From contig NW_027451610.1 in assembly GCF_964194025.1 (NCBI RefSeq), positions 1 through 64,000 on the forward strand: a stretch of DNA of 64,000 nt. Direction: 5' to 3'. The notes beneath the pieces were generated by a model. That model was not told where the DNA came from. It did not search any database and saw only the letters and a program-made list of their open reading frames with translations. Below are positions 8,391 to 57,504 of this stretch, piece by piece (position 1 is the first letter of the stretch; each line of letters begins with the position of its first letter). Made by a program: the position numbers and the translations under genes. This DNA is from Convolutriloba macropyga (Eukaryota).

Positions 8391-8832
8391 TTTCTTGAGT
8401 CGTTTTTTTTTCGGTCTTCTGGATTAGGTCAACAATAGCTAACAAAATTTCTAATATTTCTAAATCTCTTGTAATAATCCAGGTATTTTCTGCTTCTTTA
8501 CTTTAGTGAGAGACCTCTTGGTGGTGGTCTTGTATGAGTTGTGTACTGTATACGCACTGAGCTTGCATTTACTTAAAATATATGATTAGAGTGGGCAAAT
8601 AGAAATGAATGAGGATAAATACAACGGTCATGCGTTAATTTTTCAACTCCAACTTTGATTTTGCGACACCACGTTTTTAAGCAATATAGATTCATGCCAA
8701 CTTGCTAGGCATGCTCTTTTATTATTTTACAAAACCCGCTACTTTAAAATACAAAAACAAGTTTAAATTTTTTATAATCAAAACAATAGGCCCATGTTAG
8801 GAGGTCTATTCAGATGCAACTACTGTGAAAAT

Positions 8833-8905
8833 GGACCAGTACTGGATTCGAACCAGCATCTCTTACTTGCAAGCCTAGTGTGCTACCCAATTACACCAAC
8901 TGGTC
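8833..8905 (-). ncRNA. tRNA-like unit in the leftmost TRIM LTR (not a decoding tRNA)
   Basis: Perfect 7-bp acceptor stem GACCAGT/ACTGGTC, A box TGGTGTAATTGG, T arm GCTGG-TTCGAAT-CCAGT, followed by TTTT; anticodon stem CTAGG/GTAAG is mismatched. Confidence 0.8.
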
Positions 8906-9080
8906 TTAAGCTCTCGAACTTGGGCATCTCTTATAACCCGTTCTTACGTTCTTTCTTGTTCCTCAAGGCTTCATTTCTCTAGCCAAGTATACGTTGAACA
9001 AGTAGAGCTTCTTGTCAAGCTATGTCAAGCTTATCTTATGCACAATTTACATTAGGTTGTTCTCTTTCAACCTTCTAACA

Positions 9081-9091
9081 CTCCCCCTTAA
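9081..9091 (-). promoter_or_regulatory. TRIM polypurine tract TTAAGGGGGAG (second copy at 9464-9474)
   Basis: Directly precedes the TG of the downstream LTR on the - strand. Confidence 0.85.
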
Positions 9092-9215
9092 ATTGCGCAT
9101 CCTCTCTTTCACAGTTTCTAACTATATTGTCTCTCTTCTGCGGTTAAGCTCAGAGACTAGGGTCTGGGCCCATAACCTGTTAGGGGGTCTAATCAGGTGC
9201 AACTACTGTGAAAAT

Positions 9216-9288
9216 GGACCAGTACTGGATTCGAACCAGCATCTCTTACTTGCAAGCCTAGTGTGCTACCCAATTACACCAACTGGTC
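9216..9288 (-). ncRNA. tRNA-like unit in the middle TRIM LTR
   Basis: Identical to 8833-8905, shifted +383 bp. Confidence 0.8.
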
Positions 9289-9546
9289 TTAAGCTCTCGA
9301 ACTTGGGCATCTCTTATAACCCGTTCTTACGTTCTTTCTTGTTCCTCAAGGCTTCATTTCTCTAGCCAAGTATACGTTGAACAAGTAGAGCTTCTTGTCA
9401 AGCTATGTCAAGCTTATCTTATGCACAATTTACATTAGGTTGTTCTCTTTCAACCTTCTAACACTCCCCCTTAAATTGCGCATCCTCTCTTTCACAGTTT
9501 CTAACTATATTGTCTCTCTTCTGCGGTTAAGCTCAGAGACTAGGGT

Positions 9547-9560
9547 CTGGGCCCATAACC
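9547..9560 (-). promoter_or_regulatory. TRIM primer-binding site GGTTATGGGCCCAG (second copy at 9164-9177)
   Basis: + strand reads CTGGGCCCATAACC, the anticodon-arm sequence of animal initiator tRNA-Met; directly abuts the LTR end; same PBS type as Drosophila copia. Confidence 0.9.
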
Positions 9561-9598
9561 TGTTAGGGGGTCTAATCAGGTGCAACTACTGTGAAAAT

Positions 9599-9671
9599 GG
9601 ACCAGTACTGGATTCGAACCAGCATCTCTTACTTGCAAGCCTAGTGTGCTACCCAATTACACCAACTGGTC
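9599..9671 (-). ncRNA. tRNA-like unit in the rightmost TRIM LTR
   Basis: Identical to 8833-8905, shifted +766 bp. Confidence 0.8.
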
Positions 9672-10170
9672 TTAAGCTCTCGAACTTGGGCATCTCTTAT
9701 AACCCGTTCTTACGTTCTTTCTTGTTCCTCAAGGCTTCATTTCTCTAGCCAAGTATACGTTGAACAAGTAAAGCATTTTTTCAAGTTATGACAAGCTTAT
9801 CTTGTGTACAAATTCCGTTTGGTTTGTTCTTCTCTATTAACATTATAACACAAGCTGACATAAATTGTACCAGGTAGAAACCCGGGCTCAAAACTGACCT
9901 CTGAGTGCACCCTTTTTAGCCATGATCTTATTTGGCAAGTGCTCTAAATTTGGTTTTGGTGCGTCCAATAAACAGTTCAAAAATTTAGTCAGAACGTATT
10001 TATAGTACACTTATTTTTAGATAAAATGGGCGCACTATAATGCCAGATCAGAGATTAAATCTGACGCATAAAAATCTCATTAGTTCTTCGTTGCAATGGC
10101 TGGTAATCAAAGGTGGATCGGAACTTAGGAGAGGTCTGATCGACGACACAAAAACGCGTGCACAAAAATT

Positions 10171-11139
10171 TCCGTCCCACTAAATTCTGAAAAAAACTTT
10201 CTTTCAATTATTTACCACATACATTCAATGGAATAATAAATACATCTTGACTCATTCACTGAAATTCTTTAAATAATTCACTGCTTTTACGTAAATTCTA
10301 GAAATAATTTACAGCATCAATTCTCATCAGAGAGTAATTTTTAGTAGTTTACAGGACGTATTCACTGAAATTATAAAATTATTCCACCGCATTCACTTCA
10401 ATTCTGAATGTAACTCACCGAATTCATCAAAATTCTATGAAAGATTCACGGCATTCTCCAAAATTCTAAATCAATTCCCATCACTCACTTAGTTTCTAGA
10501 AATAATTCAGAGCATCATTTCTAAACAAAGAGTCATTTTTTAGTAAATTACCGAATGCATTCAAATAAATTATCAAAATATATCACCGCATTCACTGAAA
10601 TTCTGAAAATAATTCATCGCATTCACTGAAGTTCTATAAATAATTCACGGCATTCACCAAAACTCTAAAATAATTCACAGCATTCACTTAAATTCTAGAA
10701 AAAATTTACAGCGTCAATTCTCAACAGAGTTTTTTTTTCAATAATTTACCGCATGTATTCACTGAAATTATAAAAAAATATCACCGCATTCACTGAAATT
10801 GTGAAAGTAATTACCTTATTCACTTAGATTCTAGAAATAATTAACAGCATCAATTTTGAACAAAGAGTCATTTTTCAATAGTTACCCGCACGTATTCACT
10901 GAAATTATAAACATATTTCATCTCATTCACTGAAGTTCTAAAAAATAATTCACCACATTCAGTTAAATTCTAGAAATAATTCACAACATATATTCTGAAC
11001 AAAATGTCTTTTTTTTCAATAACTTTCCGCACGCATTCAATGAAATTATAAAAAAAATATTTCACCGCATTCACCGAAGTTTCAAAAATAATTCACAGCA
11101 CTATACGGCATCTTTCAGTTCTAATTCGCCAGGGACGGG
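10171..11139. mobile_element. Non-autonomous TIR element with CATTCACTGAAATT repeats
   Basis: Termini (T)CCGTCCC...GGGACGGG; internal degenerate short tandem units. Confidence 0.5.
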
Positions 11140-56427: not shown

Positions 56428-57504
56428 GTCTTGGCCAAGACTTGCATTTAGACTTGCACGTCTTGGCCATGACTTATATTTAGACTTGCATGTCTTGGCC
56501 AAGACTTGCATTTAGACTTGCACGTCTTGGCCAAGACTTGCGTTTAGACTTGCACGTCTTGGCCAGGACTTACATTTAGACTTGCATGTCTTGGCCAAGA
56601 CTTGCATTTAGACTTGCACGTCTTGGCCAAGACTTGCGTTTAGACTTGCACGTCTTGGCCAAGACTTGCATTTAGACTTGCACGTCTTGGCCAGGACTTG
56701 CATTTAGACTTGCACGTCTTGGCCAAGACTTACATTTAGACTTGGATGTTTTGGCCAAGACTTGCGTTTAGACTTGCACGTCTTGGCCAAGACTTGCGTT
56801 TAGACTTGCACGTCTTGGCCAGGACTTGCATTTAGACTTGCACGTCTTGGCCAAGACTTACATTTAGACTTGCATGTCTTGGCCAAGACTTGCATTTAGA
56901 CTTGCATGTCTTGGCCAAGACTTACATTTAGACTTGCACGTCTTGGCCATGACTTATATTTAGACTTGCATGTCTTGGCCAAGACTTGCATTTAGACTTG
57001 CACGTCTTGGCCAAGATTTGCGTTTAGACTTGCACGTCTTGGCCAGGACTTGCATTTAGACTTGCACGTCTTGGCCAAGACTTACATTTAGACTTGCATG
57101 TCTTGGCCAAGACTTGCATTTAGACTTGCATGTCTTGGCCAAGACTTACATTTAGACTTGCATGTCTTGGCCAAGACTTGCATTTAGACTTGCACGTCTT
57201 GGCCAAGACTTGCGTTTAGACTTGCACGTCTTGGCCAGGACTTGAATTTAGACTTGCATGTCTTGGCCAAGACTTACATTTAGACTTGGATGTTTTGGCC
57301 CAGACTTACATTTAGACTTGCATGTCTCGGCCAAGACTTGCATTTAGACTTGCACGTCTTGGCCAAGACTTGCGTTTAGACTTGCACGTCTTGGCCAGGA
57401 CTTGCATTTAGACTTGCACGTCTTGGCCAAGACTTACATTTAGACTTGCACGTCTTGGCCATGACTTGCATTTAGACTTGCATGTCTTGGCCAAGACTTG
57501 CATT
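56428..57504. repeat. 32-bp minisatellite, about 34 copies
   Basis: Unit GTCTTGGCCAAGACTTGCATTTAGACTTGCAC; first and last palindromes are exactly 33 x 32 bp apart. Confidence 0.95.

What the first reader, a model, noticed from the sequence alone, without database searches (positions are those of the whole stretch)
9216..9320. LTR tRNA mimic keeps its top half but not the anticodon arm, with a TATA-like box at -30 and T4 just downstream
Seen: acceptor stem 7/7 and T stem 5/5 (one G-U) with a canonical TTCGAAT loop. The anticodon stem has only 2 Watson-Crick pairs around CT-TGC-AA. TATAAG starts 30 nt upstream of +1 and TTTT follows the 3' end. Known: RNase P, RNase Z and the CCA-adding enzyme recognise the acceptor/T-arm half. 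Inference: the structure, not only the A and B boxes, is maintained. The mimic may serve as the R region and set both ends of the genomic RNA, with a leaky T4 read through in the 5' LTR and used in the 3' LTR.
Basis: partly seen in the sequence, partly recalled or inferred. Interest (0 to 1): 0.7.

Follow-up and report, generated by a model that had tools for sequence, protein, structure and literature searches.

The report
tRNA look-alike inside mini-retrotransposon repeats
The tRNA-shaped stretch is real and sits in the end repeat of a small non-coding jumping gene of an acoel worm, a type published in 2024 (Helenus), but copies across the genome give no sign that its shape, rather than just its sequence, is being preserved.

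Summary
On the minus strand, 9288->9216 is a tRNA-derived unit (Rfam 52.6 bits). Acceptor 7/7, D 4/4 and T 5/5 pairs are intact, and the anticodon stem is broken. TATAAG lies at -30 and T4 lies 2 nt after the discriminator.

It sits in a 286-bp LTR of a miniature LTR retrotransposon with a 97-bp internal part and 5-bp target duplications. In the window it forms an LTR-int-LTR-int-LTR array at 8795-9850. The genome is Convolutriloba macropyga. This is the published Helenus/TRIMp3 kind (Kojima 2024). Unlike the animal members listed there, it has Copia-type hallmarks, and I found a Copia family with the same primer site and the same first 8 LTR bases.

The claim that the structure is maintained is not supported. 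Among 276 copies, both acceptor strands (72%, 68% intact) are kept no better than the anticodon arm (67%, 68%), the upstream flank (67%) or the A and B boxes (71%, 70%). Broken pairs are mostly uncompensated, and no subfamily differs in any stem.

The Pol III "R region with leaky T4" model fits the geometry and mirrors Cassandra, but no RNA data were available.

The scan has already reported this same family on other DNA (s1-211000).

The parts
8795..9850 (-). Whole array: LTR-A, internal part, LTR-B, internal part, LTR-C, of a Helenus-type miniature LTR retrotransposon (383-bp period)
   Evidence: TRF period 383, 2.7 copies. BLAST parse into LTR and INT units (L001). It is a mosaic with no target duplication.
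9561..9850 (-). LTR-A, the upstream LTR in element orientation. Positions 1-76 are of another, older subfamily; positions 77-286 are identical to LTR-B.
   Evidence: 21 differences, all within LTR positions 1-76.
9464..9560 (-). Internal part 1 (97 nt). PBS GGTTATGGGCCCAG at 9560->9547; polypurine tract AAGGGGGAG at 9472->9464.
   Evidence: The PBS is the exact complement of CTGGGCCCATAACC, present 239 times in this genome in an initiator-tRNA-type anticodon arm motif. The same PBS string occurs in the fungal Helenus-1_HemVas.
9178..9463 (-). LTR-B (286 bp), the copy holding the finding. Inferred layout: U3 9463->9289, R 9288->9211, U5 9210->9178.
   Evidence: Exact 286-bp ends in 30 loci, with 5-bp TSDs. 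Contigs of an independent run break at 9178 and 9463. The U3/R/U5 split is inference.
9216..9288 (-). tRNA-derived unit (73 nt with discriminator). A box about 9281->9270; B box about 9237->9227.
   Evidence: ARAGORN; Rfam 52.6 bits and pair-by-pair alignment.
9313..9318 (-). TATAAG, at -30..-25 from the first base of the tRNA-like unit
   Evidence: Kept in 5 of 6 diverged relatives. Genuine tRNA genes of this genome lack such a box (2 of 106).
9211..9214 (-). T4 run, the candidate Pol III terminator. It is the only T>=4 run in the 383-nt sense unit.
   Evidence: ATTTT is intact in 223 of 276 copies.
9081..9177 (-). Internal part 2, identical to internal part 1
8795..9080 (-). LTR-C, the downstream LTR. 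It differs from LTR-B only at LTR positions 267, 272 and 279. It is followed by a truncated PBS remnant (TGGGCC).
8833..8905 (-). tRNA-like unit of LTR-C
9599..9671 (-). tRNA-like unit of LTR-A

Best explanation
The stretch is the tRNA-derived Pol III cassette of the LTR of a Helenus-type (TRIMp3) miniature LTR retrotransposon of the acoel Convolutriloba macropyga.

Shown:
- A 286-bp LTR (TGTTAG...CTAACA).
- A 97-nt non-coding internal part that starts with a primer site complementary to the anticodon stem-loop of initiator tRNA and ends with a polypurine tract.
- 5-bp target duplications, plus solo LTRs and LTR-int arrays.
- Hundreds of copies, many 98-100% alike.
- A coding Copia family in the same genome with the same primer site and the same first 8 LTR bases.
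- Natural chimeras between that Copia family and this element.

Inferred:
- TFIIIC binds the A and B boxes, and TFIIIB is placed with help of the TATAAG at -30.
- Pol III starts near +1 of the mimic in the upstream LTR.
- Most transcripts stop at the T4 and give a ~75-nt RNA.
- A fraction reads through U5, the primer site, the internal part and U3, which hold no other T4, and stops at the T4 of the next LTR.
- The result is a ~461-nt RNA with a 78-nt repeat (R = the mimic) at both ends. Copia particles copy and insert it, primed by a half initiator tRNA.

The intact acceptor, D and T stems are most simply inherited from the parent tRNA or SINE head and carried along with the promoter. Nothing found here shows selection on the fold itself.
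For: tRNA call and pairs.

Element anatomy and TSDs.

Genome identity: G000 has 1,175,981,408 bases, matching 1,175.98 Mb in PMC13650328.

Published class: Kojima 2024 defines Helenus as a TRIM with a tRNA-like LTR sequence, PBS and PPT, and proposes Pol III use. The Cassandra model of start and stop inside the small-RNA unit of the two LTRs is described in the same paper. Three-LTR arrays are typical of Cassandra.

Only one T>=4 run per 383-nt unit. No AATAAA or ATTAAA in the LTR.

Copia partner:
- L066 ORF matches Retrotran_gag_2 and Pol_BBD behind the same PBS.
- The partner's 610-bp LTR starts TGTTAGAA.

Chimeras:
- Mini-element LTR-PBS-Copia gag-pol occurs at 8 exact sites plus L010.
- A Copia pol runs directly into PBS-INT-LTR in L091, and that junction is single-copy.
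- Two ~5.3-kb composites lie on C8 and C9.
- The composites carry a T6 17 nt after the PBS, while the T-run-free mini unit reached hundreds of copies. L091's 3' junction is single-copy; copy numbers of the other composites' junctions were not measured. This is what a Pol III-driven LTR predicts.

Copy numbers: 775 LTR modules against 85 internal parts.
Against: - No transcript evidence at all. The only runs holding the sequence are contigs of uncertain type, and none is on record as RNA.
- T4 is an ordinary terminator of genuine tRNA genes here (42 of 106 contexts), so read-through may be rare.
- A TATA box at -30 is not part of genuine tRNA genes in this genome (2 of 106), and it is the classic Pol II geometry.
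- The lack of other T4 runs is not significant for this composition: about 1 is expected.
- An intact acceptor/T half should attract RNase Z, which would cut a read-through RNA after the discriminator.
- The same LTR bounds at least two ~5-kb Copia-coding composites, which Pol III could not transcribe in full.
Confidence: 0.6

Rival explanations
1. The LTR is a Pol II promoter. The TATAAG at -30 sets a Pol II start near +1 of the mimic, and the tRNA-like stretch is simply the first part of R. Alternatively it is a TFIIIC-bound boundary that shields the promoter. Pol III makes at most a short by-product.
For: - TATAAG at -30 is kept in diverged relatives but is absent from genuine tRNA genes (2 of 106).
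- The same LTR stands in front of Copia gag-pol with open frames of 502 aa or more, and bounds ~5.3-kb composites on C8 and C9.
- L091's LTR reads TATAAAAG.
- Earlier scan notes report tRNA-like units in LTRs of coding BEL/Pao elements of this genome (s1-224111, s1-229316; not checked here).
Against: - There is no poly(A) signal hexamer anywhere in the LTR.
- The composites look like rare, separate recombination products. L091's 3' junction is unique, and the composite 5' LTRs carry only private differences from ordinary copies.
- The partner Copia keeps an unrelated 610-bp LTR with TATAAA and many T-runs.
Confidence: 0.22
2. The acceptor/T-arm half is kept by selection because tRNA enzymes (RNase P, RNase Z, the CCA-adding enzyme) or tRNA-binding proteins act on it, and this processing helps to set the ends of the element's RNA.
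For: - 16 of 16 pairs are intact in the acceptor, D and T stems, against 3 of 5 in the anticodon stem.
- In contigs of a related organism, the 42 covered bases of the mimic show no substitution, while U3 shows about 7-10 in about 104-112 bases.
- A fungal Helenus LTR read by eye also keeps most of its cloverleaf.
Against: - Acceptor strands are no better kept than the anticodon arm, flank or boxes in 276 copies.
- Changes are uncompensated: 8 of 9 copies with a changed 5' strand and an unchanged 3' strand are disrupted, and only 2 of about 25 changes in the older subfamily are compensated.
- The conserved stretch in the related organism includes the broken anticodon arm.
- Fold z-score is -0.49.
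- RNase Z cutting after the discriminator would separate R from U5-PBS and disable the RNA as a template.
Confidence: 0.08
3. Passenger. A tRNA pseudogene or SINE head landed in the LTR and is copied along without any role, and transcription depends on other LTR sequence.
For: Decay is uniform across all segments, promoter boxes included. No parent tRNA could be identified; the best match is 49 of 73.
Against: - The unit is complete with a terminator, and it is placed so that the only T4 of the unit lies just behind it.
- The same arrangement recurs in over 200 Helenus families of fungi, animals and a plant, and with 5S in Cassandra and Ajax.
- All subfamilies keep it.
Confidence: 0.08

Closest known systems
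Helenus (TRIMp3), Kojima 2024, Biology 13:119 (PMC10886601)
   Same: - A miniature non-coding LTR retrotransposon with a tRNA-like sequence carrying A and B boxes in each LTR.
- PBS right after the 5' LTR and PPT before the 3' LTR.
- Total length 669 bp, within the 311-1263 bp range.
[quoted passage not shown]
   Different: - The host is an acoel (Xenacoelomorpha), a phylum not in Kojima's Table S1.
- Every animal Helenus in the part of Table S1 read here (the last part, further wasps and the plant, was not read) has 4-bp TSDs, where the length was determined, and the paper's text gives all animal Helenus Gypsy-type 3'-end primer sites.
- No family in his sequence file matched five short strings from this LTR, LTR end and polypurine-tract end.
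- The paper does not discuss a TATA box or the terminator.
Cassandra (plant TRIM with 5S rRNA gene in the LTRs; Kalendar et al. 2008, as described in PMC10886601 and PMC7215508)
   Same: - A small-RNA gene with Pol III promoter and terminator inside each LTR.
- RNA reported to start in the unit of the 5' LTR and end in that of the 3' LTR.
- Short arrays of about three LTRs with internal parts between them are common.
   Different: - 5S rather than tRNA, and plants only.
- The reported terminal repeat is 18 nt, against 78 nt predicted here.
- The PBS matches the 3' end of initiator tRNA (TGGTATCAGAGC).
tRNA-derived SINEs (SINE2)
   Same: A tRNA-derived head with A and B boxes used as a portable Pol III promoter. 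The anticodon region is commonly decayed.
   Different: SINEs are copied by LINE machinery and have no LTR, PBS or PPT. Here the LTR also supplies fixed upstream sequence, the TATAAG.
Half-tRNA priming of Drosophila copia and yeast Ty5
   Same: The primer site pairs with the anticodon stem-loop of initiator tRNA, not with its 3' end.
   Different: Those are coding, autonomous elements. This element borrows the machinery.
tRNA-like 3'-end modules cut by RNase P/Z (MALAT1 mascRNA, MHV68 tRNA-miRNA units)
   Same: A tRNA-like fold with good acceptor and T arms embedded in a longer transcript.
   Different: Processing is proven there. Here there is no RNA evidence, and cutting would harm the template.

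Membership tests
Helenus / TRIMp3 (Kojima 2024) | Two LTRs around a short non-coding internal part (TRIM size) | tested here: met
   286-bp LTRs and a 97-nt internal part, 669 bp for the 2-LTR form; exact in many loci.
Helenus / TRIMp3 (Kojima 2024) | tRNA-like sequence with A and B boxes inside the LTR | tested here: met
   ARAGORN and Rfam 52.6 bits. A box TGGTGTAATTGG, B box GGTTCGAATCC.
Helenus / TRIMp3 (Kojima 2024) | PBS just after the 5' LTR and polypurine tract just before the 3' LTR | tested here: met
   GGTTATGGGCCCAG starts at the first base after CTAACA, and AAGGGGGAG ends at the base before TGTTAG. Its complement is present in this genome's initiator-type tRNA arm motif.
Helenus / TRIMp3 (Kojima 2024) | Target site duplications showing integrase-mediated insertion | tested here: met
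   5-bp TSDs in 15 of 23 elements, and two more with 4 of 5 bases.
Helenus / TRIMp3 (Kojima 2024) | Transcription by RNA polymerase III from the LTR unit | not testable with these tools
   No RNA run holds it; only contigs were available.
Animal Helenus as described (Gypsy-dependent) | 4-bp TSD and a PBS matching the 3' end of a tRNA shared with Gypsy elements | tested here: not met
   5-bp TSD. Anticodon-loop initiator-tRNA PBS shared with a Copia family.
Functional tRNA-Ala gene | G3:U70 identity pair and an intact anticodon stem | tested here: not met
   C3-G70, and two non-standard pairs in the anticodon stem. Genuine tRNA-Ala(UGC) genes of this genome are unlike it. The best match to any sampled genuine tRNA is 49 of 73.
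Cassandra | 5S rRNA-derived sequence in the LTR | tested here: not met
   The only Rfam family reaching its gathering score in the window is tRNA.

The most novel reading that the evidence does not exclude
The LTR is a dual-use start site. The TATAAG-positioned start at +1 of the mimic serves Pol III for the 461-nt mini-element RNA and Pol II for the ~5-kb Copia composites that carry the same LTR. In this reading the intact acceptor/T half acts at the RNA level, for example through La, exportin or RNase Z, to sort or trim these RNAs. That would be a retroelement promoter shared by two polymerases, with a tRNA-shaped RNA signal.
Probability: 0.1. Interest if true: 0.7.

Novelty: new member of a known kind. 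Interest (0 to 1): 0.33.

Why it matters
This extends the recently named Helenus/TRIMp3 kind to acoels. It also shows that the Copia-dependent form, so far described only in fungi, exists in an animal.

The genome holds natural chimeras between the mini-element and its likely Copia helper. These are rare direct evidence that the two are copied in the same particles. They also form a natural test of whether the tRNA-type LTR can drive a long RNA.

For genome annotation, this one module adds about 775 tRNA-like hits that are not tRNA genes. The question of real interest is which polymerase makes the RNA and where it ends, and that question stays open.

Tried and rejected
- **Fetching copies.** I tried to fetch about 93 further copies for a proper pair-by-pair covariation count. 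I used whole-genome pattern tallies instead and read about 117 displayed rows by eye.
- **RNA evidence.** The one run search found no run on record as RNA. Laying four runs gave contigs only, so no starts, ends or strand.
- **T-run avoidance.** With this composition only about 1 T4 run is expected per unit, so the lack of others is not significant.
- **Parent tRNA.** No genuine tRNA sampled matches better than 49 of 73. The D arm of the older subfamily resembles tRNA-Gln by eye, but tRNA-Gln did not rank among the best overall.
- **Fungal origin.** The first guess from PBS type, TSD and genome size was a rust fungus. I dropped it when the assembly size matched the C. macropyga genome note.
- **Published families.** Five short strings from the LTR, its end and the polypurine-tract end were not found in Kojima's sequence file; only the PBS string was. 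Line breaks in the file could hide matches.
- **Linkage between U3 and U5 variants to locate R.** Only two polymorphic sites occur in 41 local copies, so this was not usable.
- **Self-priming by the mimic.** Its 3' end is not complementary to the PBS, read from the sequence.
- **Cassandra paper.** PMC2311327 is not held.

Full report
**What is there**

The tRNA-like unit lies on the minus strand, 9288->9216.
- ARAGORN finds three such units, 383 bp apart. Rfam's tRNA model scores each at 52.6 bits against a gathering score of 29.
- The model alignment shows 7/7 acceptor pairs, 4/4 D-stem pairs and 5/5 T-stem pairs with a UUCGAAU loop.
- The anticodon stem has two Watson-Crick pairs, one G-U and two non-standard pairs.
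- TATAAG lies at 9318->9313, which is -30 to -25. TTTT lies at 9214->9211, two bases after the discriminator.
He missed only that the D stem is intact too.
- The unit is not an alanine tRNA. It has C3-G70 instead of G3:U70 and is unlike the genuine tRNA-Ala(UGC) genes of the genome.
- No sampled genuine tRNA matches it better than 49 of 73.
- As a free RNA it is not predicted to favour a cloverleaf (z -0.49).

**The element**

Read in minus orientation, the 383-bp period resolves into two parts.
- The first is a 286-bp LTR, TGTTAG...CTAACA.
- The second is a 97-nt internal part. It begins with GGTTATGGGCCCAG and ends with AAGGGGGAG.
- The same 286-bp and 97-bp units, with exact ends, occur elsewhere in the genome as solo LTRs and as 2-, 3- and 5-LTR forms.
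- 15 of 23 elements have perfect 5-bp target duplications.
- Contigs of an independent run break at 9178 and 9463, the LTR ends.
- Genome-wide, the 3' half of the mimic occurs 775 times with up to 3 mismatches. The start of the internal part occurs 85 times, and the LTR-end/PBS junction 82 times. Most copies are therefore solo LTRs or sit in other contexts.

**The genome**

The assembly has 1,175,981,408 bases. That matches the 1,175.98 Mb chromosomal assembly of the acoel Convolutriloba macropyga (PMC13650328). An earlier scan note gave the name as a lead.

**Known kind**

- In his tables all animal families with a determined TSD have 4-bp duplications. His text states that animal families have primer sites for tRNA 3' ends shared with Gypsy elements.
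- His fungal families have 5-bp duplications, mostly anticodon-loop initiator-tRNA primer sites, and Copia partners.
- The element here is of the fungal style but sits in an animal of a phylum not on his list.
- The 14-nt primer site is identical to that of Helenus-1_HemVas. Five other short strings from this element (four within the LTR, one at the polypurine-tract end of the internal part) are absent from his sequence file.
- The complement of the primer site occurs 239 times in this genome within an initiator-tRNA-type anticodon arm motif.

**The helper**

A search for the primer site behind other LTR ends found a Copia family.
- Its reading frame matches copia-type Gag and the Pol beta-barrel domain.
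- Its 610-bp LTR starts with the same eight bases, TGTTAGAA, but is otherwise unrelated. It holds TATAAA and many T-runs.
- Natural chimeras link the two. The mini-element's LTR and primer site run straight into Copia gag-pol at eight exact sites plus one variant. The frames are open for 502 aa or more and are 97% identical to the Copia family.
- In L091 a Copia pol (RVT_2) runs straight into primer site, internal part and LTR. That junction is unique in the genome.
- On C8 and C9 the coordinates show LTR, primer site, about 4.85 kb of Copia sequence, then primer site and internal part. A second mimic-bearing LTR module was seen on C9 only; on C8 no second LTR module was seen. In neither case does a mini-element LTR end precede the second primer site.
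- These forms are what template switching at the shared primer site inside a mixed particle would give. This mechanism is my inference.
- The 5' LTRs of the composites carry only private differences from ordinary copies, which points to recent, separate events.

**Test of 'the structure is maintained'**

I defined a set of copies by two anchors outside the mimic, TATAAGAG and CACAGTAG. This gave 278 hits, about 2 expected by chance. I then counted how many keep each short segment.

| Segment | Motif | Intact copies |
|---|---|---|
| Upstream flank | AGAGCTT | 185 |
| Acceptor 5' | GACCAGT | 199 |
| A box | TGGTGTA | 197 |
| Anticodon arm 5' | CTAGGCT | 186 |
| Anticodon arm 3' | CAAGTAA | 189 |
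| T stem / B box | GCTGGTT | 194 |
| Acceptor 3' | ACTGGTC | 189 |
| A + T4 (five bases) | ATTTT | 223 |

- Per base this is 0.944 to 0.958 kept everywhere, which is uniform.
- Even the promoter boxes, which must work in the source copies, show no excess. The variation among copies is therefore decay after insertion.
- Of 19 listed copies with a changed 5' acceptor strand, nine have an unchanged 3' strand. Eight of those are disrupted and one is a wobble.
- In the older subfamily (D loop AATGGTTA, 18 copies) about 25 acceptor changes include only two compensated ones. Its source sequence has the same acceptor and the same broken anticodon arm.
- In 45 local copies the acceptor has 6 mismatches in 630 site-copies. 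The flank has 17 in 1080 and the anticodon stem 12 in 450.
- In contigs of a related, unnamed organism the 42 covered bases of the mimic, anticodon arm included, show no substitution. U3 shows about 7-10 in about 104-112 bases. The mimic as a whole may therefore be constrained, but not its top half in particular.

**How it most likely works**

- The layout is that of a Pol III gene with an added upstream TATA box.
- Genuine tRNA genes here lack such a box (2 of 106 contexts). They end with T4 (42 contexts) or T5 (49 contexts).
- The sense unit has no other T>=4 run, though only about one would be expected by chance. The LTR has no poly(A) signal hexamer.
- A Pol III transcript from +1 of one LTR to the T4 of the next would be 461 nt with a 78-nt repeat at both ends. 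That is the Cassandra logic. It needs partial read-through of the first T4, which is assumed, not shown.
- The composites carry a T6 17 nt after the primer site. L091's 3' junction is single-copy; the copy numbers of the other composites' junctions were not measured. This fits a Pol III LTR but does not prove it.
- The main rival is a Pol II start set by the TATA box.
- An intact acceptor/T half should attract RNase Z, which would cut the read-through RNA. This follows from established knowledge of that enzyme and weighs against selection for the fold.

**The window's own copy**

The array is a mosaic. LTR-A differs from LTR-B only in its first 76 bases, with 21 differences. LTR-C differs only at positions 267, 272 and 279. 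The two internal parts are identical and there is no target duplication. Young units thus seem to have entered an older LTR by homologous recombination or conversion.

**Verdict**

It is a new member of a published kind, and the scan has already reported the same family elsewhere (s1-211000). The structural inference is not supported, and the R-region model is plausible but untested.

Noticed in passing
window 8795-9850 (edges 9775-9850 and 8795-8814): The three-LTR array is a mosaic. Only the first 76 bases of the upstream LTR and three sites in the last 20 bases of the downstream LTR differ from the young copy. There is no target duplication, and a truncated primer-site remnant (TGGGCC) follows. 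This looks like young units recombined into an older LTR.
   Followed up: partly
L015:1501-3286, L010, L027/L014; G000 C1:3726487, C1:71712754, C9:31726, C9:4364797, C11:3660032, C2008:18194: The mini-element's LTR and primer site run directly into Copia gag-pol, 97% identical to the 610-bp-LTR Copia family and with open frames of 502 aa or more. These are natural chimeras of the mini-element and its likely helper.
   Followed up: partly
L091:7041-9405 (G000 C4:11161040-11163404): A decayed Copia pol (integrase, RVT_2) ends about 10-15 codons before its expected stop. It continues directly with the mini-element's primer site, internal part and LTR. The junction is unique in the genome, and this LTR reads TATAAAAG.
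   Followed up: partly
G000 C9:4359543-4364874 and C8:42617041-42622185: Two composites of about 5.3 kb: tRNA-type LTR, primer site, about 4.85 kb, then a second primer site with the internal part. A second LTR module was seen on C9 only; on C8 no second LTR module was seen. This rests on coordinates only, because the sequence could not be fetched.
   Followed up: partly
L014 (reverse strand) 1372-1381: A truncated Copia gag joins the U5 end of the mini-element's LTR at a 10-base microhomology (ACAGTAGTTG), followed by int-LTR-int-LTR.
   Followed up: partly
G000 C8:7375521-7380665; C7:25086394-25088992; C7:6098326-6103211; C4:69659134-69665882: LTRs of this family recur at spacings of about 2.5 kb (three in a row), 4.8 kb and 6.6 kb. 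This suggests further, larger element forms bounded by the tRNA-type LTR.
   Followed up: no
G000 C7:7429521-7441491: The initiator-tRNA-type anticodon arm motif occurs 239 times in the genome. This includes a tandem array with a period of about 705 bp on C7, far more than a usual initiator tRNA gene count.
   Followed up: no
L031-L060 (G000 C13:31.10-31.23 Mb, C7:44.05-44.10 Mb, C1:20.08-20.12 Mb, C15:4.79-4.83 Mb): Large tandem clusters of near-identical tRNA genes whose anticodons vary within one cluster: Thr/Arg/Ser on C13, Lys with Gln and stop-reading variants on C7, and Cys/Ser on C15. The first look gave about 88,000 tRNA-like candidates genome-wide.
   Followed up: no
window 9247-9463 in runs X1-X3 (organism A): Contigs of a second, unnamed organism hold 90-95% similar pieces of this LTR. 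U3 has changed while the covered part of the mimic has not. One contig shows a B-box indel and an acceptor mismatch.
   Followed up: partly
window 56428-57504 and 10271-11096: Unrelated tandem repeats: a 32-bp unit in 33.7 copies, and 136-199-bp units in about 3 copies.
   Followed up: no
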